This document shows, piece after piece, positions 18,510 through 44,077 of a DNA stretch of 64,000 nucleotides; the stretch's first letter is position 1, and the number at the start of each line of letters is the position of its first letter. The position numbers were made by a program, and so were the translations under genes. The stretch spans positions 124,001-188,000 of IMG/VR virus record IMGVR_UViG_3300046787_000200. One strand, written 5' to 3'. The notes below the pieces were generated by a model. That model was given only the letters and a program-made list of their open reading frames with translations, did not search any database and was not told the origin of the DNA.

Positions 18510-21071
18510 ATGGCCATTATACAAATTTCGAAAATTCAACAACGCTCAGGTAACTTAGTTGACTTGCCACAGCTTGATGAAGCGCAGTTCGGTTGGGCGA
18601 ATGACGCTAGACGACTTTTTATCGGTACTTCTACTCCCAATCCAATTGAAAATGTTGAAGTATTAACTTCTTATTCAAACATTAGTTTCAGCCAGATTGA
18701 CGGTTCTTACGGAAATCTTAACATTAATATTGCAAATGCCAACGTTGCAGCCAATTCAATTGGTGAAGTACTAGCATTTGATGGTAATAATTGGATCAAT
18801 GCAGGCGCAAATGCAGGAGGCCTGATTAACTTAGGTGACGTAGCTAATGTTAAAATTAATGACGGCGCAGTTGGTTATGTATTAACTACTGACGGTTATG
18901 GTAATCTTTCTTGGACTAGCAAAACAACTGCAATTGCAAACATTATAGACATATCAACTGATAGTCCAGCAGTAATGACATTTGATCCAAATGTTGTTAG
19001 TTATACCAATGGAACTGCAGTTACTATTTTAGGAGTTGAAGGTAATGCTAATAGTGAAATTAATGGTGAAACATTATACTTAAAAGTATCTAATACTTTT
19101 AATACTACCGGTGAAGTAACTCTATACACTGACGATGCATTATCTAACGCATTTAGCGGAGCCAATTTAACTTATACAAATTCTCCAAATGCTACAGCAA
19201 CAAGTGCGTTCGGTATCAATGTTAGTTCTCCCGCATCTGGGGTAGAAGGTTCAATTCAATACAATGTCAGCGGAGTATTGACCGGGTCGGCATCATTAAA
19301 ATTTGCAAATAGTAATGTTGAGATATCTAGCAGTAATGTAGTAGTTACAGGTGGCAATGTATCTGCTAATATTATATCAGGTAATTTACTAACCGGAACA
19401 TTAACAACAGCCGCACAACCTAACATAACAAGCACTGGCACATTAGCTGGATTAGTAGTAGCTGGGCACATAACACCAAGCGCAAATATAACATATAACT
19501 TGGGTAACAACACTAATAGATTTAATGATTTATATTTGGCTAATAGCACTATCTATATAGGTGCACAGACAATTAGTGCTAACTCAACAAATGTAATTGT
19601 ATCAGGCGTTCTAACTGCTAACTTATCCGGCAATGCAACTACAGCAGGTACAGTAACAACAGCCGCACAACCTAACATCACTAGTGTTGGTTCATTAACA
19701 TCACTAAGTGTAGTTGGTAATATAACTACTGGTAATTTAGATGGTGCTAACTCTATTACAGCTAACTATTTTATTGGTAGTGGAAATAATCTAAGTAATA
19801 TTCAGGGTGCAAATATAACAGGTGCAGTAAGTTATGCAACTACTGCTAATAGTGTAGCAGCCGCAAATGTAAGTGGTTTGGGTAACATTGCAACTATTAA
19901 TTTAGATGGTAGTGCAAGTAATATATTATATGGCAATGGCGTATTCGCAGCCGTAGGAGCTACATATAGTAATAGTGATGTAGCAACATTTTTAGCTAGT
20001 TACGGTAGTAATACAATTACAACTACTGGTAACGTAAGTGTTGGTAATATTATAGGTAACGGACAAGCATTGAGTAGTATTGCAGGTGCTAACGTAACAG
20101 GTACTGTTGCAAATGCTACATACGCAACAAGTGCAGGAACTGCAACGTCTGCTACCTCTGCTACTAGCGCATCTAGTGCGACTACTGCAGGCACCGTAAC
20201 AACAGCCGCACAACCAAATATTACAAGTACAGGTACACTTTCAAGTATTTCTGTTTCTGGTAATGCTAATATTGGTAATATAGGCACTGCAGGATTAATT
20301 ACTGCTACTGGTAACTTAAATGCAGGTAATATTATTACCGGTGGAGTTGTTTCTGCAACAGGTAATATTACTGCTGGTCTATTTGTAGGTGATGGTGGTG
20401 GATTAAGTAATATCAATATAGCAGCCGGGTCATCTATCTTAAACGGTAATAGCAATGTATCAGTTAGTGCAAATAGTAATGTAACAATTAGTGTAAGCGG
20501 AACAAGTAATGTTGCTGTTATAACAAACACTGGTATTAACGTTACCGGAACACTAAGTGCTAGTGGTAACATCACTACCGGTAATTTATCAGTTACTACT
20601 GGAACAGTTACATTAGGAGCACTAACAACCGGCGCAAATACTACTGCAGGAACTATTACTGGTAATTGGACATTGACGAGTGGGTCAAAGCTTGAAGCAT
20701 CATACGCTGACTTAGCAGAATATTATGAAGCAGATCAAGCGTATGATCCGGGTACTGTTTTAGCGTTCGGTGGAGAAAAGGAAGTCACCATCGCTGAAGA
20801 CGGCACCACAAGAGTTGCAGGTGTAGTTTCAACTAATCCTGCATATGCAATGAATGCAAATTGTCAAGGTATTGCTATAGCAATTGCATTACAAGGACGT
20901 GTACCTACTAAGGTTCGTGGTAACATACGCAAAGGCGATATGATGGTGTCCGGTGGTAATGGATTCGCTAGACCAAGCTCATCACCGCAGATGGGAACAG
21001 TTATCGGTAAAGCATTAGAAAACTTTGACGGAATCGAAGGCGTAATTGAAATCGCAGTCGGTAGATTATAA
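18510..21071 (+). CDS. Tail fibre/appendage protein with C-terminal peptidase G2-type autocleaving chaperone
   Basis: TTAAQPNITSxG repeats; YADLAEYY...GVVSTNPAY...IALQGRVP...IGKALE domain. Confidence 0.8.
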   Translation: MAIIQISKIQQRSGNLVDLPQLDEAQFGWANDARRLFIGTSTPNPIENVEVLTSYSNISFSQIDGSYGNLNINIANANVAANSIGEVLAFDGNNWINAGANAGGLINLGDVANVKINDGAVGYVLTTDGYGNLSWTSKTTAIANIIDISTDSPAVMTFDPNVVSYTNGTAVTILGVEGNANSEINGETLYLKVSNTFNTTGEVTLYTDDALSNAFSGANLTYTNSPNATATSAFGINVSSPASGVEGSIQYNVSGVLTGSASLKFANSNVEISSSNVVVTGGNVSANIISGNLLTGTLTTAAQPNITSTGTLAGLVVAGHITPSANITYNLGNNTNRFNDLYLANSTIYIGAQTISANSTNVIVSGVLTANLSGNATTAGTVTTAAQPNITSVGSLTSLSVVGNITTGNLDGANSITANYFIGSGNNLSNIQGANITGAVSYATTANSVAAANVSGLGNIATINLDGSASNILYGNGVFAAVGATYSNSDVATFLASYGSNTITTTGNVSVGNIIGNGQALSSIAGANVTGTVANATYATSAGTATSATSATSASSATTAGTVTTAAQPNITSTGTLSSISVSGNANIGNIGTAGLITATGNLNAGNIITGGVVSATGNITAGLFVGDGGGLSNINIAAGSSILNGNSNVSVSANSNVTISVSGTSNVAVITNTGINVTGTLSASGNITTGNLSVTTGTVTLGALTTGANTTAGTITGNWTLTSGSKLEASYADLAEYYEADQAYDPGTVLAFGGEKEVTIAEDGTTRVAGVVSTNPAYAMNANCQGIAIAIALQGRVPTKVRGNIRKGDMMVSGGNGFARPSSSPQMGTVIGKALENFDGIEGVIEIAVGRL

Positions 21072-21084
21072 TTAGGAAAAACAA

Positions 21085-21372
21085 ATGGCAGCAACAATAT
21101 ATACCGCAAATAGTACGAGCCAACTATCAAGCGCAAGTAATACTGATAAAGTAAGAATATCAACTTCTACATCAGCTATTGCTATAGCGATAGGTGATGC
21201 TAATACTACTGCAAATTTAACAGCATGTGAAATCGTCCCTGCAAATACAGTATTAAATAGCGTTATTGTAGGTCAAGGGAATTATATCGCTTACATCAAT
21301 GTAGCTGGTTCCGCCGGCGCATTTAGTATTACTGAATTAGGTGCAAATCACCCTGATACCGGTACTGAATAA
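21085..21372 (+). CDS. Small putative virion protein
   Basis: AGGA SD; beta-rich, 95 aa. Confidence 0.65.
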   Translation: MAATIYTANSTSQLSSASNTDKVRISTSTSAIAIAIGDANTTANLTACEIVPANTVLNSVIVGQGNYIAYINVAGSAGAFSITELGANHPDTGTE

Positions 21373-21475: not shown

Positions 21476-22735
21476 ATGGGACGTCCTCTAAAAATAGCAA
21501 AGGCCCAAGCGGTCTTAACAGTAACTAACACTACTGCAACAACTAACGTTGTAACAGTATCTGAAGATTTATCAACTCTTGGCGTTATTGCCGGCATGCC
21601 ATTCGTACCAAGCGTAACGACAGGTACAAACTTGGTAGCAGGTACAACATATTGGATCTTAGCAGTTTTAAGTACTACAACTTTCACTGTTTCTGCAACT
21701 GATTTAAGTGCTAATACAACACGTACTGCAGTAACATTGACGACAGGTACAACTGCTTCTGCATTGACTGTTGGGTTTGTTGATGCATATTTCAACAACC
21801 CAGAAGGTGGTACTGGTTTCCCAACAACTAACGCTAATACATATGGTGTAGTTGGTGGTAATACAGCAATCTATGGTTCACAAGTTCTACCTCGTGTTGC
21901 TATCGGTGTTAATGGTACAGGTACATTGTATTCTGCTACTGATACTGAATTTGTAACAGGCATTGGTACTGATTTAGCAAACACATTGAGCGTAGGTTCA
22001 GTAATTCAAATCGCTAGTGCAAACGTTAATGGTACAACAACTGATTATACTACTCTAGGTTTTGCTAACACAGTTCCTGGATTAACAACAGTTGCTGTTG
22101 CTAACACACAAAATACAGGTAACATCATTGGTACTTCAGGTAATGCTGAAACATTGATTGCTAACGGTACAGTAAGATTTACTGCTAACTTAGGCGGTCT
22201 AGTTGCTGGTACAGTTTATTTCGTTAAGGCTATCGCAAATGCATCTGCATTCACTGTTTCTACAACATTGGGCGGTGCTGAAGTTGATTTGTCAAGTGCT
22301 ACTGGTACTCCAGACGCACAACAAGATGTAGTTGAATTGACAGCAAATGCGGCAGTGGCTGCATCAGGTTCTTCATTCATCTATGCAGATAATGAAGCAG
22401 GTTTCATCTTACGTCAAAAAGGTAAGCAGAAGTATCTAGTTCAAGGTGGTACAAGTGGTTTGATCGCACAATGCTATACTGCTAACTTGGCTAATACTGC
22501 ATTGACACCAAACACTATGAATATTGTTTCAACTGATGCGGCAACTGATGACACTTATGTTCAGTCATTAAGTGATTACGGTTCATTGACATTCAGTGCT
22601 ACTTCTGGTCCAGTTGCTACAGGTAACATTGTTCTTGCTAACGCTACTCCAGTTGTTGCTTCGTTCAACACTGCATATGCGGCAAATACATATGGTGGAC
22701 AGCCTTACCCAATCGTAACTATTGCTAACGCTTAA
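21476..22735 (+). CDS. Virion structural protein (T/A/G-rich, two copies of a shared beta-module)
   Basis: Late box at 21385, AAAGGA SD; GGLVAGTVYFVK...FTVSTTLGG module. Confidence 0.7.
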   Translation: MGRPLKIAKAQAVLTVTNTTATTNVVTVSEDLSTLGVIAGMPFVPSVTTGTNLVAGTTYWILAVLSTTTFTVSATDLSANTTRTAVTLTTGTTASALTVGFVDAYFNNPEGGTGFPTTNANTYGVVGGNTAIYGSQVLPRVAIGVNGTGTLYSATDTEFVTGIGTDLANTLSVGSVIQIASANVNGTTTDYTTLGFANTVPGLTTVAVANTQNTGNIIGTSGNAETLIANGTVRFTANLGGLVAGTVYFVKAIANASAFTVSTTLGGAEVDLSSATGTPDAQQDVVELTANAAVAASGSSFIYADNEAGFILRQKGKQKYLVQGGTSGLIAQCYTANLANTALTPNTMNIVSTDAATDDTYVQSLSDYGSLTFSATSGPVATGNIVLANATPVVASFNTAYAANTYGGQPYPIVTIANA

Positions 22736-22737
22736 TC

Positions 22738-23058
22738 ATGGTAACATCATCCAGAGCAATTAAGATGCCAACAAAAAAGACTGAAACAGATGTAGCGGTT
22801 CTTCAAGTGCAAGTGCAAAACATAACCGATGATATCAGCGAAATCAAATCTGATATCAAGGATGTTAATCTTAGTATACAAAAGAACAATGAGGATACTC
22901 ACAAGCTTCTGAAAGAAATGAAGGAAGCTAGTGCAGTTGCTCATAAATCAATGTCTGATAAAGTAGGCGCATTAGAAAAATGGCGATGGATGATGATGGG
23001 AGCCGGCGTAGTTATCGGATCGTTAGGGTTCGACACAATAGCAAAATTGCTAAAATAA
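22738..23058 (+). CDS. Coiled-coil protein with C-terminal membrane anchor (XhlA/holin-like)
   Basis: Heptad core, then EKWRWMMMGAGVVIGSLGF hydrophobic segment. Confidence 0.5.
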   Translation: MVTSSRAIKMPTKKTETDVAVLQVQVQNITDDISEIKSDIKDVNLSIQKNNEDTHKLLKEMKEASAVAHKSMSDKVGALEKWRWMMMGAGVVIGSLGFDTIAKLLK

Positions 23059-30244: not shown

Positions 30245-33200
30245 ATGGCATTAACCTCACCAGGCGTAGAAGTAACGATTACAGATGAAAGTCAATACTT
30301 ACCAGCCCCAACAAATTCAGTCCCACTAGTTCTATTAGCAACTGCACAAAATAAAGCAAATGCTAGTGGTACAGGTGTAGCAGTGGCAACAACCGCAGCC
30401 AACGCTAATAAATTATATCAAGTAACAAGTCAACGTGATTTAGTAAATTTATATGGTACACCGTTCTTCTACACAACGACCAATGGTACGCCAATTCAAG
30501 GTTACGAATTAAATGAATACGGTTTATTAGCGGCTTATAGCTTGCTAGGTGTTACAAATCGTTGTTATGTATTACGTGCAGATATTGACCTAGCAAGTTT
30601 AGTAGGTCAAACAGGTCGTCCAACTGGTGCACCAACTGACGGTACATACTGGTTAGATAGTACTACTACAACTTGGGGTATCTACGAGTTCAATGCTACT
30701 ACTGGTCAATTCTCATTACAGAATCCTATCGTAATTACTGATGCAGCCGATATGTCAGCCGGATTCCCATTAGCAAGTATTGGTAGTATTGGTGATTATG
30801 CAGTTAACGCAATAGAAGTAACAACCGACGCTACAAATGCTGATAGAACATATTATTATAAGACAACTGACAATGCATGGGCTATCTTAGGTGGTTCAGC
30901 ATGGAAAGCAGATGTTCCTGCAGTAATTTCAAGCTTGTCTAATCCAGACGTTGCCGCTGGCACAATGATTATTAGCTTGTCAGGTTCTGTATCTGTAACA
31001 CTAACTATCGGTGGTAGTGATACAGTAGGTGACGTTGCAACTGCAATTAATGGTTTAGGTTGGGATTATCTAGCAGCCGAAGTTCGTAGTGGTAAATTAT
31101 GTTTATTCACACGCCAACGTTTAACTACAGGTAGTGCGAACGCTTATATTGGTTTGAGTGGTACATCATTGACTTCTATGGGTCTAACTGCAGGTGATTA
31201 TTATACACCAACTGTATCATATGGTACAAGTGCGCAGATGCCATTATGGACAGCAAGTCAAACAACTCCTCGTCCAACAGGATCTGTTTGGATTAAAGTC
31301 GGTGCTGCCGGTACTGGATTAGCTCCAGTAATGTCACAATATAGTACTGCTACAGCATCATGGATATCAAAATCAGTTGCATTAGCAACAAGTGATTGGG
31401 CAGTTACTTCAACATTAGATTCAACAGGCGGTCAAGCTATCCCTGCAGGATCAATATATGGACAATATTATTATAACGGTACTAGCACAACTGCTCCGGT
31501 ATACTTCTGGGAAAGACTAGCTACAGGTGCTACAGTAGTAACAGGTGATAATACAACACCAGATTTCGCATCAGGTCCATATTACATGAACGTATATGTG
31601 TCAGTTCCCGGTAGTTCATCACTAAGTTCTGCATATAATTTCACATTAGCAGGTAGTAGTAATGCTACTGATTTCGTTACCGCATGGTATGCGGCAGGTA
31701 TTCCTTACACGACCGCAGTTGTAACTACAGACGGTGCAATTCAAGTGACTCATACTGAGGGTGGCGAAATTATCATGGACGATACTGTAAATTCATCATT
31801 TGCAGGAACAGGTATTTCTAATGGTCTAATAGTTGAAGCAGGTTTTACATCTGGTACAACTACAGGTGCTAAGTACGGTCCTACTGTAAGTGCTACGTTT
31901 TCAGGTGTTGCGCAAGCAGGAACACAAACAGGAACATCAGGTTCAGGTGCTACATTTAATATAGAATCTATCTATAACATCTACATTCCTGTAGGTGACG
32001 GTGTTCAAGCCGGTGGTAGTGGTTATGCGGTAGGTGATACAATCACAATCGCAGGTACAGTGTTAGGTGGATCATCTCCTGCAAACGATTTAGAAGTTGT
32101 AGTAACTGCAGTATCTGCTGGTGCATTGTCAGCAGTAACATTTGTTTCAGGTGAACCTGAAGCACAGTATAGAACTCAATTAAGTAACTGGGTAGAATTC
32201 ACCTATACTGCTAATGAAGGTGCTCCTAGTGAAGCCCCTGCTAATAATACAAACTGGTTCTATAGTGTTGTTGACCAAGTTGATATTATGGTTCAAAAAG
32301 CTGGTGCCTGGATTGGTTATAAAAACACAGCATATGATTCAACAGGTGCTCCAGTTGCGGCTTCAGGCGCAGGCGCTACAGATCCAAATGGTCCTATAAT
32401 AAGTGCTACTGCACCTACAACTCAAAGTGACGGTACTGCATTGGTATACGGTGACTTGTGGATTGACACAAGCAACTTAGAAGTATATCCAGTAATCAGC
32501 CGTTGGGAAAGCGTTGATGGAGAAAATACATGGGTATTAATTAACAATGCAGACCAGGTAAGTAGCACTGGTGCATTATTTGCCGATGCTCGTTGGGCAA
32601 CAAGTGGTAACGTAAGTCCAGTTGATGATCCTATACCAACTATCGTTAGTTTGCTAACAAGCAACTACTTAGATTTAGATGCTCCTGATCCAAGTCTATA
32701 TCCACAAGGTATGTTGTTGTTTAACACACGCCGTAGTGGTTATAACGTTAAGCAATTCCGTGTTAATTATTTTAACAATACTAACTTCCCAGGTGAAACA
32801 CTGCCTGCACAAACTGATGCATGGGTGACAGTAAGTGGTAATTCTTCTAACGGTGCACCATATATGGGTCGTGCGGCACAACGTGCTATGGTTGTACAAG
32901 CATTGCGTTCAGCAATCGATACAAACACCGACATACGTGATGAAGATAATTACTTCAATTTAATGGCTACACCTAACTATCCAGAACTACAGCCTAACAT
33001 GGTTGTGTTGAATGCAGATCGTGGTGAGACAGGCTATATTATCGGTGATACTCCATTAGGATTAGCTGATAGTGCTACTGACATTCAAGCTTGGGCTAAC
33101 AACGATGCAGGTGCTACAAGCACAGGTGAAACTGGTTTAGTTACACGTAATACTTACTTGGGTCTATTCTATCCAAGCGGAATTACAAATGACTTGTCAG

Positions 33201-33805
33201 GCAATGAAGTTGTTGTTCCAGCATCACATATGATGTTACGCACATTCTTACGTAACGACACAGTGGCTTATCCTTGGTTAGCGGCAGCAGGTACTCGTCG
33301 TGGTAACATTGACAATGCATTGAACATTGGTTACTTAGATCGTCAGACTGGCGAATTCCAAGCAATTAAGACACGTTTAGGAATACGTGATGTATTGTAT
33401 ATTAATCAAATCAATCCATTAGTATTCTTTACTGGTGTTGGTTTGTTGAACTATGGTAACAAAAACAGTTTCAATTCACAAAGCGCATTAGATAGAACTA
33501 ACGTTGCACGTTTAGTTAACTATATCCGTCGTCAATTGACATTGGCAGCAAGACCGTTCGTATTTGAACCTAACGATGCATTAACACGTAATAGTATTGC
33601 AGGCGTAATTCAAACATTGATGGTTGACTTAGTTGCTAAACGTGGTCTCTATGATTATCTTGTAGTTTGTGATGAGTCAAACAACACACCGGCAAGAATT
33701 GATAGAAATGAATTGTGGGTAGACGTTGCAATTGAGCCTGTTAAGGCAGCTGAATTCATCTACATCCCGGTTCGTGTTTTAAACACAGGTGAATTATCAC
33801 AGTAA
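30245..33805 (+). CDS. Contractile tail sheath protein (T4 gp18-like)
   Basis: SPGVEV N-terminus; WLAAAGTRRG, DESNNTPARIDRNELWVDVAIEPVKAAEFI C-terminus. Confidence 0.95.
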   Translation: MALTSPGVEVTITDESQYLPAPTNSVPLVLLATAQNKANASGTGVAVATTAANANKLYQVTSQRDLVNLYGTPFFYTTTNGTPIQGYELNEYGLLAAYSLLGVTNRCYVLRADIDLASLVGQTGRPTGAPTDGTYWLDSTTTTWGIYEFNATTGQFSLQNPIVITDAADMSAGFPLASIGSIGDYAVNAIEVTTDATNADRTYYYKTTDNAWAILGGSAWKADVPAVISSLSNPDVAAGTMIISLSGSVSVTLTIGGSDTVGDVATAINGLGWDYLAAEVRSGKLCLFTRQRLTTGSANAYIGLSGTSLTSMGLTAGDYYTPTVSYGTSAQMPLWTASQTTPRPTGSVWIKVGAAGTGLAPVMSQYSTATASWISKSVALATSDWAVTSTLDSTGGQAIPAGSIYGQYYYNGTSTTAPVYFWERLATGATVVTGDNTTPDFASGPYYMNVYVSVPGSSSLSSAYNFTLAGSSNATDFVTAWYAAGIPYTTAVVTTDGAIQVTHTEGGEIIMDDTVNSSFAGTGISNGLIVEAGFTSGTTTGAKYGPTVSATFSGVAQAGTQTGTSGSGATFNIESIYNIYIPVGDGVQAGGSGYAVGDTITIAGTVLGGSSPANDLEVVVTAVSAGALSAVTFVSGEPEAQYRTQLSNWVEFTYTANEGAPSEAPANNTNWFYSVVDQVDIMVQKAGAWIGYKNTAYDSTGAPVAASGAGATDPNGPIISATAPTTQSDGTALVYGDLWIDTSNLEVYPVISRWESVDGENTWVLINNADQVSSTGALFADARWATSGNVSPVDDPIPTIVSLLTSNYLDLDAPDPSLYPQGMLLFNTRRSGYNVKQFRVNYFNNTNFPGETLPAQTDAWVTVSGNSSNGAPYMGRAAQRAMVVQALRSAIDTNTDIRDEDNYFNLMATPNYPELQPNMVVLNADRGETGYIIGDTPLGLADSATDIQAWANNDAGATSTGETGLVTRNTYLGLFYPSGITNDLSGNEVVVPASHMMLRTFLRNDTVAYPWLAAAGTRRGNIDNALNIGYLDRQTGEFQAIKTRLGIRDVLYINQINPLVFFTGVGLLNYGNKNSFNSQSALDRTNVARLVNYIRRQLTLAARPFVFEPNDALTRNSIAGVIQTLMVDLVAKRGLYDYLVVCDESNNTPARIDRNELWVDVAIEPVKAAEFIYIPVRVLNTGELSQ

Positions 33806-40078: not shown

Positions 40079-43000
40079 ATGGCGCAACAGAATATTGACT
40101 TTGGTACATTCCCCGATGATCCATCAGCAGATGCGATAAGAACGGCTTTTCAGAAAGTCCAACAAAACTTTGATGAAATTTTTGACTCAACAGCAAATGC
40201 GGCTGTATTGTCAGTTAATAGATCGCCTGGAGTGGGCATAACAGTTGATTCTCCTACAGGTAATGTTGTAGTAAGTGCCAATATTGCTTCAATATCAGTA
40301 AGTTCAGTTACTTTAAAAGTAGGAACAAGTCCTAGCCCCACAACTAATACAGCAACATATACAAGTTATAGTCAAACTTTATACGTTGAAATTCCTGACA
40401 ACTTAAACATTAGTAATATCACTGCAAATGGATTTATTTCTGCTACTGGAAATCTAACAGTAGCTAATGCTAATTTAGGTAATTTAGCAGTTGCTAACTT
40501 CTTTAGCGGTAACGCTAACGGATTGTTCGGTATCCCGGGAGCTAATGTTACCGGTACTGTTCCTACTGCCACAACTGCTGGTACAGTAACTACTAATGCA
40601 CAACCGAATATTACTAGTGTAGGTACATTGACTAGTTTACAAGTAGGTGGCAACATTACACCTACTGCTAATATCACCTACGATTTAGGTAATAACACAA
40701 ATCGTTTTAAAGACATTTATCTAGCAAATAGTACAATTTATTTAGGTAATGCTACATTACAAGCAAATGCTACTGCACTTGTGTTAACTAATCCATTAGG
40801 TGGACAATTAGTTGTATCTGGTAGTAGCACATCTTACAGTAATGCGATTGTTAACGGTACAAGTAATGTAGATGTTTTACTAAGTGGTAATGTCAATATT
40901 TCATCAGCCGGCAACGCTAACGTTTTAACAGTAACAGGCTCGGGCGCAAACATCACAGGTACTCTAAGTGCTAGTGGCAATGCTAATGTAGGCAATATCG
41001 GTGCAGGATTGTTTGTTGGTTCTGGTGCAAGTCTAACTAGTATCCCGGGTGCTAACGTAACTGGAACTGTTCCTACTGCAACTGTTGCCGGTACTGTAAC
41101 AACAGCCGCACAACCTAACATCACAAGTTTAGGCACAGTAACAAGCTTAAGTATTAGCGGTAATGCGAACATTGGAAACATCGGTACTGCTGGATTAATT
41201 ACAGCTACCGGTAACATCGACGGTGGTAATTTAAATACTGCAGGTGCATTAAGTGTTGTGGGTAATGCTAACATTGGTAATGTTGGAGCAGCCGCAGGTA
41301 TATTTACTACTATCGCAGGTAGCTTAACAACAGCCTCACAACCCAATGTTACTAGCTTAGGTACATTATCAACATTAAGTGTGTCTGGTAATGCTAATAT
41401 CGGAAACATCGGTACTGCTGGGCTAATAACTGCAACAGGTAACATCAGTGGTGGTAATGTTAACACTGCTGGACTAATAACTGCAACAGGTAATATAAGC
41501 GGTGGTAATGTTAATACACTTGGCGTTGTAAGTGCAAGTGGTAATGTTATTGGTGGAAATCTAACCACTGGTGGTTTAGTAAGTGCTATTGGTAATGTTA
41601 TAGGTGGTAATTTAGAGACCGGTGGCACATTAAGTGCAGTTGGAAATGCGAATGTAGGAAATATTGGCGCAACTAATGGTGTATTTACGTCAGTAGCAGG
41701 AACACTATCTACTGCGGCACAACCTAACATAACAAGCACTGGCACATTAGCAAGTTTAAGTGTAGCAGGAAGTGCAAATTTAGGCAACGTTTCTATATCA
41801 GGCAATTTGATTGCAGGTAATATTCAAGTTGACAGTATTGTAAATGGTAATAGTAATGTTGACATTACTAACCCTAATGGTAATGTAACGATTGGTGTTA
41901 ATAACGTATCCAATGTCGCAATATTTACTACCACTGGAGCTCACATCGAAGGTATTATTATTGCAGACAATGCTACCTTAGGTAATTCAGCTAATGCAAA
42001 CTACTTCATAGGTAATCTATATGGTACTGCAAATACAGCTACAACAGCAAATACAGTAACAACTAATGCACAACCTAACATCACAAGTTTAGGTACTCTT
42101 ACAACACTAAGTGTAGCAGGTAATAGTAATTTAGGCCCAGCTGGTAACGTATATATTAGCGGTGGTGTAGCCAATACATATCTAACAACTGATACTGGTG
42201 GTAATCTAAAATGGGAAGCAATTAATAATATACCACCGGGCGGTTCTAATACATCAATACAATTTAAAGATGGTGCCACGTTTGGTGGTGACTCAAATTT
42301 AACATTTGATAATGTAACACGTTTATTATCAGTTAATGGAAACATAACTGCAGGTAATATAGCTGGTAAATTAACAACAGCTTCACAAAATAATATTACA
42401 GAATTAGGAACACTAGATTATCTTATTGTAAGTACTACCGGATATATTGCAGCCGGCAGTGCAAATATTACTGCAGGAAATGTGTATGCTAATTCAGGTA
42501 CGATAGGTGCTAGTTTACTAACAGGGGCACTTACTACTGGTGCTCAACCAAATATTACAAGTACCGGTACATTAACAAGTTTAAGTATTAGTGGTAATGC
42601 AAATATTGGTAATATTGGTACTAGTGGATTAATCACTGCAACTGGTAATTTAACTGCAGGTAATATAACTACTGGTGGTTTGCTTACAGCTATTGGTAAT
42701 ATCATAGGTGGAAATATAAACACTAGTGGTACAGTTACTGCTAGTGTATTAGTAAGCAACGTGGCTACTGGTACTGCACCTCTTACAGTTACTTCAACTA
42801 CTCAGGTTGCAAACTTAAGTGTAGCAACTGCAGGTCTTGCTACATATGCTACAACCGCAAACAGTGTTGCAGGTGGTAATGTTTCAGGTGCAGTTGCATA
42901 TGCAACAACTGCAAATAGTGTAGCTGGTGGTAATGTTTCGGGTGCAGTTGGATTAGCAACTTACGCAACTACTGCAAACAGTGTCGCAGGTGGTAATGTA

Positions 43001-43444
43001 AGTGGTCAAGTTGCTAATGCGTTAGTAGCAGGTACAGTATATACAGGAGCACAATCTAATATTACAGCAGTAGGAACGTTAGCATCATTGAGTGTTAGCG
43101 GTAATGCAAATGTAGGTAACATTGGTGCTGCCTCAGGTATATACACAACACTAAGTGCTTCAGGTAATATCACAGGTGCAAACATTAACGGTACCTTCTA
43201 CGGAGCAGGCACAGGATTAACTAGTATCCCTGGAGCTAACGTAACAGGAACAGTTCCAAGTGCTACTACAGCAGGTACTGTAACAACGGCAGCACAGCCA
43301 AATGTTACAAGTGTAGGTACATTAACAGGATTAACATTAGCTAATGCCGCAGTAATATCTATGGGATCGAATACAAATGTAGGTACATTAACTGGTAACT
43401 TTACGTTAAGTACAGGATCAAGGTTATTAGCAACATACGCATAA
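40079..43444 (+). CDS. Long tail fibre/baseplate-anchored repeat protein
   Basis: N-terminal DAIRTAFQKVQQNFDE anchor; many TT(A/N)AQPN(I/V)TSxGT and GNxxGGN repeats. Confidence 0.8.
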   Translation: MAQQNIDFGTFPDDPSADAIRTAFQKVQQNFDEIFDSTANAAVLSVNRSPGVGITVDSPTGNVVVSANIASISVSSVTLKVGTSPSPTTNTATYTSYSQTLYVEIPDNLNISNITANGFISATGNLTVANANLGNLAVANFFSGNANGLFGIPGANVTGTVPTATTAGTVTTNAQPNITSVGTLTSLQVGGNITPTANITYDLGNNTNRFKDIYLANSTIYLGNATLQANATALVLTNPLGGQLVVSGSSTSYSNAIVNGTSNVDVLLSGNVNISSAGNANVLTVTGSGANITGTLSASGNANVGNIGAGLFVGSGASLTSIPGANVTGTVPTATVAGTVTTAAQPNITSLGTVTSLSISGNANIGNIGTAGLITATGNIDGGNLNTAGALSVVGNANIGNVGAAAGIFTTIAGSLTTASQPNVTSLGTLSTLSVSGNANIGNIGTAGLITATGNISGGNVNTAGLITATGNISGGNVNTLGVVSASGNVIGGNLTTGGLVSAIGNVIGGNLETGGTLSAVGNANVGNIGATNGVFTSVAGTLSTAAQPNITSTGTLASLSVAGSANLGNVSISGNLIAGNIQVDSIVNGNSNVDITNPNGNVTIGVNNVSNVAIFTTTGAHIEGIIIADNATLGNSANANYFIGNLYGTANTATTANTVTTNAQPNITSLGTLTTLSVAGNSNLGPAGNVYISGGVANTYLTTDTGGNLKWEAINNIPPGGSNTSIQFKDGATFGGDSNLTFDNVTRLLSVNGNITAGNIAGKLTTASQNNITELGTLDYLIVSTTGYIAAGSANITAGNVYANSGTIGASLLTGALTTGAQPNITSTGTLTSLSISGNANIGNIGTSGLITATGNLTAGNITTGGLLTAIGNIIGGNINTSGTVTASVLVSNVATGTAPLTVTSTTQVANLSVATAGLATYATTANSVAGGNVSGAVAYATTANSVAGGNVSGAVGLATYATTANSVAGGNVSGQVANALVAGTVYTGAQSNITAVGTLASLSVSGNANVGNIGAASGIYTTLSASGNITGANINGTFYGAGTGLTSIPGANVTGTVPSATTAGTVTTAAQPNVTSVGTLTGLTLANAAVISMGSNTNVGTLTGNFTLSTGSRLLATYA

Positions 43445-43453
43445 GGAAAATAA

Positions 43454-44077
43454 ATGGTAACGATAGAATTGTTGACAGCAATGTGCCCAAAAACAAAACG
43501 CTCTATATTAGAGGGTTATGTTGAGCCATTAAACACAGTAGCAGAATATTATGAGATGTTTGAGAATCCACGTAGGGTTGCAGGCTTCTTAGCACAGATA
43601 GCACACGAAAGTGGTGGATTCAATGCGGTCATTGAAAACTTAAACTACAGTGCTAAAGGTTTGATGGGCACATTTAAGAAGTATTTCCCTACAGAAGATT
43701 TAGCAAAGCAATACGAACGCAAGCCCGAAAAGATTGCTAATCGTGTTTATGCTAATCGCATGAAGAACGGTGATGAGGCAAGTGGTGATGGATTCAAGTT
43801 CAGAGGTCGTGGATTGATTCAATTGACTGGTCGTGATAACTATACTAAGTTCGCAGAAGCACTAGATATGGATATTGAAAGCACGATTGCATATTTAGAA
43901 ACACCAAATGGTGCTGTTGCATCTGCTGGTTGGTTCTGGGACAATAATAAACTAAATCAATATTGTGATAAAGATGACTTTGTTACATTAACAAAACGTA
44001 TCAATGGCGGCACAATTGGTTTAGAAGATAGAAAACATCACTATCATTTAGCATTACAACATTTAGGCGCACATTAA
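43454..44077 (+). CDS. Glycoside hydrolase family 19 endolysin
   Basis: FLAQIAHESGG, ENLNYS, FRGRGLIQLTGRDNY, KRINGG. Confidence 0.92.
   Translation: MVTIELLTAMCPKTKRSILEGYVEPLNTVAEYYEMFENPRRVAGFLAQIAHESGGFNAVIENLNYSAKGLMGTFKKYFPTEDLAKQYERKPEKIANRVYANRMKNGDEASGDGFKFRGRGLIQLTGRDNYTKFAEALDMDIESTIAYLETPNGAVASAGWFWDNNKLNQYCDKDDFVTLTKRINGGTIGLEDRKHHYHLALQHLGAH

What the first reader, a model, noticed from the sequence alone, without database searches (positions are those of the whole stretch)
43382..43444. Second fibre ends exactly at the autocleavage position of the first fibre
Seen: the 1121 aa fibre ends GTLTGNFTLSTGSRLLATYA-stop. The 853 aa fibre reads GTITGNWTLTSGSKLEASYA-DLAEYY (Asp codon at 20709) and continues into a peptidase G2-type chaperone. 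A second in-frame stop follows two codons later, so read-through is excluded. Established: these C-terminal domains chaperone trimer folding and cleave themselves off near the D-x-A-E motif. Inference: the gene encodes a pre-matured fibre that folds without a chaperone, borrows one in trans, or forms heterotrimers with the first fibre.
Basis: partly seen in the sequence, partly recalled or inferred. Interest (0 to 1): 0.6.

Follow-up and report, generated by a model that had tools for sequence, protein, structure and literature searches.

The report
Tail fibres lacking their self-cleaving chaperone
In a 352-kb jumbo phage, two long fibre proteins stop at exactly the residue where sister fibres cut off a phi29-type folding domain; related phages show the same thing and sometimes carry that domain as a separate small gene, so a chaperone normally built into the fibre may be shared between proteins.

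Summary
The 1121-aa fibre (window 40079-43444) ends ...GSRLLATYA, then TAA GGA AAA TAA. The 853-aa fibre (18510-21071) reads ...GSKLEASYA|DLAE and continues into a 120-aa domain.

An AlphaFold model of that domain matches the released C-terminal fragment of phi29 gp12 (Z 14.7). D734 aligns with D692, the first residue of that fragment.

This is not a one-off truncation:
- A second fibre of the same genome, outside the window, also ends at the junction.
- Relatives carry seven distinct fibre types that end there, at two fibre loci with conserved flanks. Other alleles at those loci keep the domain.
- No remnant of the domain lies downstream.

Every relative at least about 40% complete keeps one or more domain-bearing proteins. 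In four lineages the domain is a free-standing gene under purifying selection (dN/dS 0.18 for the closest pair).

A predicted complex docks the free domain trimer onto the conserved end of the 1121-aa fibre (0.84; best control 0.03).

Best reading: a functional, natively "pre-matured" fibre whose tip probably borrows the chaperone in trans. Autonomous folding is not excluded, and heterotrimers are unlikely. Nothing here has been tested at the bench.

The parts
40079..43444 (+). P0001, a 1121-aa fibre with N-terminal anchor MAQQNIDFG... and a repetitive shaft. It lies in the tail/neck module after the sheath, tube and head-closure genes, and ends natively at the junction.
   Evidence: N-terminal orthologues in 80 viral contigs
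43382..43441 (+). Conserved terminal cap motif G-T-x-T-G-N-F-x-L-S-x-G-S-R-x-x-A-T-Y-A. This is the stretch that precedes the cleavage site in domain-bearing relatives; residues 1109-1121 form the predicted docking surface.
43442..43453 (+). Stop TAA plus a 9-nt spacer (GGAAAATAA) holding a second in-frame TAA and the ribosome-binding site of the next gene. There is no remnant of a domain. The spacer resembles that of the QWYT...ATYA-type alleles.
18510..21071 (+). P0002, an 853-aa fibre (N-terminus MAIIQISK...) with a fused C-terminal auto-chaperone domain.
20649..20708 (+). Pre-junction cap motif of P0002 (residues 714-733, ...GSKLEASYA).
20709..21068 (+). A 120-aa beta-tulip domain (D734-L853) of the phi29 gp12 C-terminal / Peptidase_G2 type. 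D734 and E737 are in the conserved D-L-A-E motif. The loop N776-N784 plus R797 forms the predicted contact with the fibre tip.
43454..44077 (+). A 207-aa GH19/endolysin-like gene. It is conserved directly downstream of the fibre gene whatever the fibre's C-terminal class, which marks the 3' boundary of the exchange cassette. It is not a chaperone.
21085..21372 (+). A 95-aa gene downstream of P0002. Together with 21476-22735 and 22738-23058, it serves as the synteny marker showing that free-standing domain genes sit at the P0002 locus in other phages.

Best explanation
P0001 is a functional structural fibre of a jumbo myovirus. Its gene ends natively at the residue that becomes the mature C-terminus in sister fibres once they have cut off a phi29 gp12-type (G2, beta-tulip) auto-chaperone domain. 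Shown: the domain's fold and the register of its start; the exact end-to-junction alignment; the recurrence and age of the domain-less class; and the free-standing domain genes under purifying selection. Inferred, origin: the form arose by cassette exchange at the short ...A-T-Y-A coding stretch. That stretch is shared by the junction and by the common QWYT...ATYA-ending alleles, which fixes the break at the cleavage site. Inferred, mechanism: the conserved cap of P0001 is brought into trimeric register by a domain trimer supplied in trans. The likely donors are the two domain-bearing proteins of the same genome, P0002 and a 409-aa short-tail-fibre-like protein at genome 50184-51413. The domain loop NPAYxMN would clasp the L-x-x-G-S-R-x-x-A-T-Y-A tail.
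For: Fold: the best match is 3gqh_A, the phi29 gp12 C-terminal fragment (Z 14.7, rmsd 2.4 A, 108 residues). Model residues 45-162 align with chain 692-854, which puts P0002 D734 on phi29 D692; Foldseek agrees. Peptidase_G2 is hit by 7 of the 17 domain-bearing members of alignment A1, best E 2e-7. Recurrence: the genome holds four proteins with the junction motif, two carrying the domain and two ending at it. Junction-ending orthologues are L015, L026, L027 and P0038 at the P0001 locus, and L108-111, L113 and L117-120 at the second locus, beside domain-bearing alleles with the same N-termini. Flanks are conserved and gene spacing is compact. Syntenic relative G001 repeats the pattern. Availability of a donor: all nine relatives of about 40% or more completeness keep at least one domain-bearing protein. 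Free-standing genes: 127-140-aa domain genes with 7-20-aa non-fibre leaders sit at the P0002 locus, or overlap a QWYT...ATYA fibre by 8 nt. Their dN/dS is 0.18 for the closest pair and 0.07-0.21 overall. Docking model: 3x P0001 1040-1121 with 3x P0002 734-853 scored 0.84 against a best control of 0.03. That mark was reached by 51 of 78 solved complexes and 2 of 108 mismatched pairs. The runs agreed in at least 93% of contacts and the partner pLDDT was at least 95. Constraint: the cap motif is invariant at G, S, A and Y even in domain-less fibres. The last 50 aa of P0001 are 86-90% identical to the caps of domain-bearing fibres. Origin: the 3' end and spacer of P0001 nearly match those of QWYT-type alleles.
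Against: No experiment shows cleavage in this subfamily or any trans activity of a G2-type domain. In the characterised relative Dpo31, constructs lacking the domain were insoluble (PMC13317679), and in-trans rescue was not reported there. The docking pass may only reflect the geometry learnt from fused homologues, and the job differs from the tool's calibration set. Because the domain-bearing proteins are core genes everywhere, their co-occurrence with domain-less fibres does not discriminate between models. Some P0002 orthologues of the QWYT type have neither a fused nor an adjacent domain, so many ...ATYA fibres do without a local copy. The free-standing domains could serve another role; beta-tulip proteins are also capsid cement.
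Confidence: 0.5

Rival explanations
1. The pre-matured fibre folds autonomously. The repetitive shaft and the 50-aa cap trimerise on their own, or with host chaperones, and in this fibre family the cis domain is a dispensable accelerator. It has therefore been lost repeatedly without replacement.
For: Domain-less forms are frequent: 9 of 25 complete alleles at the second locus. Most alleles at the P0001 locus have no G2 domain at all (32 QWYT-type of 42). No class-specific helper gene lies downstream. Conservation of the cap could be purely structural.
Against: The QWYT-type alleles carry a globular C-terminal domain that could nucleate trimers, whereas the junction-ending ones carry none. Dpo31 fragments lacking the homologous domain were insoluble. 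Free-standing domain genes are kept under purifying selection. The docking loop PAYxMN is conserved in those genes even though they have no fibre in cis.
Confidence: 0.33
2. The truncated fibres are defective or decaying alleles. They would be by-products of recombination in a hypervariable cassette, tolerated because the phage carries about ten other fibre genes.
For: They are a minority among cap-bearing proteins (2 of 91 in the best hits). The genome has many fibre paralogues.
Against: The reading frames are intact over 894-1533 codons and are seen in many independent samples. The class persists over substantial divergence: the neighbouring 149-aa genes within the truncated clade are 72-93% identical to the G000 copy, and fibre lengths differ. 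Gene boundaries are compact. The cap stays 86-90% identical to functional ones.
Confidence: 0.06
3. P0001 forms heterotrimers with P0002, so that one fused domain serves mixed chains.
For: The two share repeat and cap motifs.
Against: The N-terminal anchors and the lengths differ (1121 vs 853 aa). The caps are only 50% identical. A single domain per trimer could not form the trimeric beta-tulip body seen in phi29 and modelled here. The second domain-less fibre has yet another anchor.
Confidence: 0.03
4. The alignment of the end with the junction reflects only a recombination hotspot at a module boundary. On this reading the fused domain is not cleaved there, or is a structural (cement-like) domain rather than a chaperone.
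For: The ATYA microhomology with QWYT alleles would by itself place breaks at this spot. The beta-tulip fold is shared with capsid decoration proteins (Z 13.0 to HFTV1), and two members hit Phage_cement.
Against: The best structural match is the gp12 fragment, and it starts at the aligned Asp. D-L-A-E is almost invariant (one D-L-G-E among the fused members, D-I-A-E and D-I-S-E among free-standing genes), including behind the short leaders of those genes. Both characterised homologues are released at an Asp (phi29 residue 692; Dpo31 Asp664).
Confidence: 0.08

Closest known systems
Bacillus phage phi29 gp12 pre-neck appendage, C-terminal auto-chaperone (MEROPS G2; PDB 3GQH, 3SUC)
   Same: A C-terminal beta-stranded trimeric domain behind a trimeric fibre or spike. 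The fold matches at Z 14.7 and the released fragment starts at an Asp that aligns with D734. Some relatives score weak to moderate Peptidase_G2 Pfam hits.
   Different: Sequence identity is only about 21%, and a sequence profile does not find gp12. The domain here is shorter (120 vs 163 aa). The client is a long repetitive fibre, not a beta-helix spike. Paralogues and orthologues exist that lack the domain, or encode it as a separate gene; I did not find this described for G2 in the library searched.
Marine podovirus Carin-1 tail spike Dpo31, domain D4 (PMC13317679)
   Same: A gp12-like trimeric C-terminal domain that starts at an Asp, is shed from the expressed protein, and is needed for solubility of the rest.
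   Different: It is always fused in that protein, and no trans or split version is reported.
S74 intramolecular chaperones of K1F endosialidase, T5 pb1 and GA-1 gp12
   Same: The logic is the same: a C-terminal trimeric domain registers the fibre and then cleaves itself off (PMC4690869). S74 ends occur as alternative cassettes at these same loci (L022, L131).
   Different: The fold is different (helical bundle with tentacles) and so is the chemistry (Ser-Lys). PF13884 hits neither window protein.
Separately encoded fibre chaperones (T4 gp38/gp57A, Mu Tfa, cyanophage Pam3 gp25)
   Same: A trimeric helper binds the fibre tip in trans. Pam3 gp25 was noted to resemble S74 intramolecular chaperones (PMC9608196). 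The pairs in L191 and L195, a fibre plus an overlapping small domain gene, have the classic fibre-chaperone gene order.
   Different: No such gene lies next to P0001. The presumed helper here has the G2 beta-tulip fold and would come from other fibres' cleaved domains.
Pseudomonas jumbo phage PA5oct gp359 (YP_010678855.1, virion protein by MS)
   Same: It is the closest cultured relative of the genome's 409-aa domain-bearing protein. It has the same N-terminus type, the same ...KYA|DLAE junction and the same domain, and it lies next to a gene whose annotation notes a T4 gp10-like baseplate wedge subunit.
   Different: Identity is about 47% over the domain. No junction-ending paralogue was examined in PA5oct.

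Membership tests
Peptidase G2 / phi29 gp12-type C-terminal auto-chaperone (for P0002 residues 734-853) | Beta-stranded (beta-tulip) fold of the released gp12 fragment | tested here: met
   AF2 model with pLDDT above 90 over the domain. 3gqh_A is the top hit at Z 14.7, rmsd 2.4 A, 108 aa. 3suc and 3gqh appear in Foldseek.
Peptidase G2 / phi29 gp12-type C-terminal auto-chaperone (for P0002 residues 734-853) | Pfam PF11962 match above the gathering score | tested here: inconclusive
   P0002 scores 20.7 bits against a cut-off of 25 (E 3e-4). Seven of 17 domain-bearing homologues match, best E 2e-7. Precomputed PF11962 hits exist on several short homologues.
Peptidase G2 / phi29 gp12-type C-terminal auto-chaperone (for P0002 residues 734-853) | Asp as the first residue of the released fragment, with a conserved acidic residue three positions on | tested here: met
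   D734 and E737 lie in D-L-A-E, which is nearly invariant over the 17 fused homologues (one reads D-L-G-E) and is kept as D-[LI]-[AS]-E in the free-standing genes. Model residue 45 (D734) aligns with chain residue 692. The catalytic role of Asp and Glu is recalled from Xiang et al. 2009 and was not read here.
Peptidase G2 / phi29 gp12-type C-terminal auto-chaperone (for P0002 residues 734-853) | Actual autocleavage and ATP-dependent release | not testable with these tools
   Needs expression plus mass spectrometry. ATP-site residues were not compared.
Domain-bearing auto-chaperone fibre (for P0001) | Presence of the C-terminal domain in the gene or downstream in any frame | tested here: not met
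   The ORF ends at the junction. A six-frame genome search finds only two copies of the domain, both elsewhere.
S74 endosialidase-type intramolecular chaperone | PF13884 domain at the C-terminus | tested here: not met
   No Pfam hit in P0001 or P0002. PF13884 is present only in other alleles.
Fibre plus adjacent trans chaperone gene pair (Tfa/gp38-like) | A small chaperone gene directly downstream of the fibre gene | tested here: not met
   The gene downstream of P0001 is GH19/endolysin-like and is conserved in all allele classes. Downstream of the second domain-less fibre lies a 149-aa protein with a LapG-like fold, present in all classes. The feature is met only in other phages (L191, L195).

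The most novel reading that the evidence does not exclude
In this group of freshwater-type jumbo phages, a self-cleaving G2 auto-chaperone has become a shared, trans-acting assembly factor. Fibres whose mature C-terminus is ...A-T-Y-A are all capped and registered by domain trimers. This would cover fibres cleaved from a fused precursor, fibres encoded already truncated, and possibly the common QWYT...ATYA type. The trimers would be released from a core short-tail-fibre-like protein or from P0002, or be made from free-standing 127-140-aa genes. That arrangement would let fibre cassettes be swapped without carrying their own chaperone.
Probability: 0.35. Interest if true: 0.75.

Novelty: new variant of a known kind. 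Interest (0 to 1): 0.6.

Why it matters
Intramolecular chaperones of phage fibres and spikes are treated as strictly cis devices, and removing them usually ruins recombinant receptor-binding proteins. A natural series within one phage lineage now offers three states: fused, precisely deleted, and split into a separate gene. Such a series gives a direct experimental handle on three questions:
- whether a G2-type domain can work in trans;
- what minimal tail it recognises (about 13 residues ending in ATYA);
- how modular fibre exchange copes with chaperone dependence.

A positive result would be useful for engineering and producing fibres, and for annotating the many metagenomic fibres that end in this motif.

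Tried and rejected
- **Cultured phage records.** Megablast and tblastn of the P0001 region against them gave nothing.
- **Sequence searches of the PDB.** Neither the single sequence nor a profile found gp12; only the fold comparison did.
- **A diagnostic residue at position -5.** I considered polar in fused forms versus Ala/Leu in truncated ones, and rejected it. A fused allele reads ...AATYS|D (L071), and truncated ones read ...QATYA (L108, L117).
- **The 149-aa gene downstream of the second truncated fibre as a class-specific helper.** It is present in all allele classes and overlaps the ribonucleotide reductase gene. Its truncated-linked copies do form one clade (100/99), while the reductase and fibre N-terminus trees do not. 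I read this as a single origin plus linkage, not as proof of coupling.
- **Short "MAEYY..." and "MQATYA..." proteins.** These are gene-calling artefacts or fragments (P0309 spans a scaffold gap) and were not counted as free-standing genes.
- **Literature.** Searches for in-trans tests of intramolecular chaperones found no usable statement. Xiang et al. 2009 and Schwarzer et al. 2009 are not held.
- **Heterotrimer idea.** No support.

Full report
**Setting.** The window is bases 124001-188000 of a 352,012-bp viral record, 36.6% G+C, linear, and rated complete by CheckV. The region around the finding is a myovirus tail and neck module. It holds a tail sheath gene (30245-33805), tube genes, a head-closure-like gene and a 752-aa protein. 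These are followed by the 1121-aa fibre, a GH19/endolysin-like 207-aa gene and an 825-aa Ig-domain protein.

- P0001 (40079-43444) ends ...GTLTGNFTLSTGSRLLATYA, then TAA GGA AAA TAA. The second stop overlaps the next gene's ATG.
- P0002 (18510-21071) reads ...GTITGNWTLTSGSKLEASYA(733) followed by D734-L-A-E and 116 more residues.
- BLASTP aligns the last residue of P0001 with A733.
- A six-frame search of the genome finds the downstream domain only twice, in P0002 and in a 409-aa protein at genome 50184-51413. It is never found after P0001.

**What the domain is.**
- By sequence the evidence is weak. Peptidase_G2 scores 20.7 bits against a cut-off of 25. Seven of the 17 domain-bearing homologues in alignment A1 hit it, best E 2e-7.
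- By structure the evidence is clear. The AF2 model has pLDDT above 90 over the domain.
- Its best match among 48,161 chains is the phi29 gp12 C-terminal fragment 3gqh_A: Z 14.7, rmsd 2.4 A, 108 residues, 21% identity. Model residues 45-162 align with chain residues 692-854.
- Model residue 45 is D734, and 692 is the first residue of the released phi29 fragment.
- The next matches are beta-tulip capsid decoration proteins.
- In a second characterised relative, Dpo31 of a marine podovirus, the homologous D4 starts at Asp664 and is shed. Constructs lacking it were mostly insoluble (PMC13317679).

**Not a one-off.**
- The genome holds four proteins with the junction motif. Two carry the domain: P0002 and the 409-aa protein, ...GSRLNATYA|DLAE.
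- Two end at the junction: P0001 and an 898-aa fibre at genome 337020-339716...GSRFAATYS-stop, stored as P0232.
- At the P0001 locus, 42 complete orthologues defined by the N-terminal anchor divide as follows: 32 with a different globular end (...QWYTVGATYA), 4 with the fused domain (including the closest relative L011), 3 ending at the junction (L015, L026, L027) and 3 others. P0038 is a further junction-ending one.
- At the P0232 locus, 25 complete orthologues divide as follows: 9 ending at the junction (four distinct types), 9 with the fused domain, 4 of the QWYT type, 1 of the S74 type and 2 others.
- Both flanks are conserved whatever the class, and gene spacing stays compact at 9-14 nt or about 40 nt.
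- The syntenic relative G001 (174 kb) repeats the G000 pattern: two domain-bearing core proteins and a junction-ending QQNIDFG-type fibre.
- At the P0232 locus, the adjacent 149-aa genes of truncated alleles form one clade (100/99). Trees of the fibre N-terminus and of the next gene do not show this. The truncated 3' end there is thus old, has a single origin, and has been carried into different backgrounds.

**Why exactly at the junction.** This part is inference.
- First, the product equals the mature fibre.
- Second, the DNA suggests how the break arose. The P0001 end, gcaacatacgca TAA GGAAAATAA ATG, nearly matches the ends and 9-nt spacers of QWYT-type alleles such as L048, L050 and L089. 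The fused alleles have other spacers.
- The fused junctions read ...gc[ta] ac[at] ta[ct] gc[t] GAC....
- An exchange within the A-T-Y-A coding stretch shared by the two allele kinds would yield precisely this truncation.

**How it may fold.**
- All nine relatives of about 40% or more completeness keep at least one domain-bearing protein. The ~400-aa one is found in eight of them. Its cultured counterpart is PA5oct gp359, a virion protein next to a gene whose annotation notes a T4 gp10-like baseplate wedge subunit.
- Of 62 complete P0002 orthologues, 48 are fused and none ends at the junction.
- Free-standing domain genes exist. They encode 127-140 aa, and a 7-20-aa non-fibre leader precedes A|D-[LI]-[AS]-E.
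- In L188, L189 and L194, the domain gene follows a collar-type fibre at the P0002 locus.
- In L193, the domain gene follows a beta-helix-like protein and precedes the 95-aa orthologue.
- In L191/L192 and in L195, the domain gene overlaps by 8 nt a fibre ending QWYTVGATYA. In L191 that fibre is a full P0002 orthologue.
- These genes evolve under purifying selection: dN/dS is 0.18 at dS 0.25 for the closest pair and 0.07-0.21 otherwise. They also keep the PAYxMN loop.
- The predicted complex of three P0001 tails (1040-1121) with three free domains (734-853) scored 0.84 against a best control of 0.03. That mark was reached by 51 of 78 solved complexes and 2 of 108 mismatched pairs. The runs agreed in at least 93% of contacts and the partner pLDDT was at least 95.
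- The contacts are P0001 1109-1121 with P0002 776-784 and R797, which are the most conserved stretches of both partners.
- This pass shows compatibility, not binding. It may echo the geometry of fused homologues, and the job is unlike the tool's calibration.

**Weighing the readings.**
- Trans chaperoning is the best-supported mechanism, at about 0.5.
- Autonomous folding remains plausible, at about 0.33, because many fibres at these loci lack the domain and co-occurrence with core domain-bearing genes proves nothing.
- Decay (0.06), heterotrimers (0.03) and a mere hotspot without cleavage (0.08) are less likely, for the reasons given under the rival explanations.

**Comparison with what is known.** P0002 behaves as a member of the phi29 gp12/G2 auto-chaperone kind by fold and junction. 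Pfam membership is borderline and cleavage is untested. P0001 is not a member, because it lacks the domain. It is instead a natural equivalent of the processed product. Trans-acting fibre chaperones are well known (gp38, Tfa, Pam3 gp25). In the library searched I found no report of G2-type domains that are deleted at the cleavage site or split off as genes. I therefore rate this a new variant of a known kind, of moderate to good interest.

Noticed in passing
outside the window: genome 337020-339716 (-), locus L107:621-3317 (-): A second junction-ending fibre, P0232 (898 aa, N-terminus MSLILKQE..., end ...GSRFAATYS). It sits in a cluster of at least six fibre genes at genome 337-352 kb, with one more at 152-2383.
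   Followed up: yes
outside the window: genome 50184-51413 (+), locus L002:709-1938: A 409-aa protein with the same junction (...GSRLNATYA|DLAE) and domain. It is found in eight of the nine relatives searched and resembles PA5oct virion protein gp359, which lies next to a gene whose annotation notes a T4 gp10-like baseplate wedge subunit. It is probably a short-tail-fibre analogue. Its cap motif is closer to P0001 (16 of 20) than P0002's is (13 of 20).
   Followed up: partly
loci L021-L090 and L122-L130 (related contigs): Most alleles at both fibre loci end in a different globular domain, yet their last residues are again ...QWYT(V/L)(G/N)ATY(A/S). The mature C-terminus A-T-Y-A is thus common to three architectures. 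Whether this reflects homology, a functional C-terminal plug or the chaperone's recognition tail is unexplained.
   Followed up: partly
L191:2200-2275 and L195:600-680: The free-standing domain gene starts at an ATG formed out of frame inside the fibre's own T-Y-A codons. It overlaps the fibre stop by 8 nt, and a G-rich Shine-Dalgarno-like run is encoded by the V-G-A codons. This looks like translational coupling of a fibre with its split-off chaperone.
   Followed up: partly
outside the window: genome 336533-336982 (-), L107:137-583 (-): A conserved 149-aa protein sits between the fibre gene and the class I ribonucleotide reductase gene, overlapping the latter by 4 nt. Its predicted fold (pLDDT 92) resembles the LapG transglutaminase-like cysteine protease that trims adhesins (TM 0.65-0.72; atlas lead 0.85). 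The alignment shows no invariant His after the candidate Cys71. Copies next to truncated fibres form one clade.
   Followed up: partly
related loci L108-L134, spacer between the fibre stop and the 149-aa gene: The ~40-nt spacer holds a hairpin just upstream of the next start codon. Its stem sequences differ between allele classes by compensatory changes. It may be a terminator or a translational control element.
   Followed up: no
window 43454-44077 (+): A GH19/chitinase-like, endolysin-type 207-aa gene lies 9 nt after the fibre gene and is 75-93% conserved in all relatives. A lysin inside the tail-fibre module may be virion-associated.
   Followed up: no
outside the window: genome 30487-49362 (+): An uninterrupted ORF of 6291 aa, with Ig-like repeats similar to the 419-aa and 825-aa window proteins, turned up as a BLAST subject.
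   Followed up: no
protein P0291: One partial homologue of the domain is deposited as a protein of a Candidatus Nanopelagicus MAG. This is probably a mis-binned phage contig. It hints at a freshwater setting and possibly at the host.
   Followed up: no
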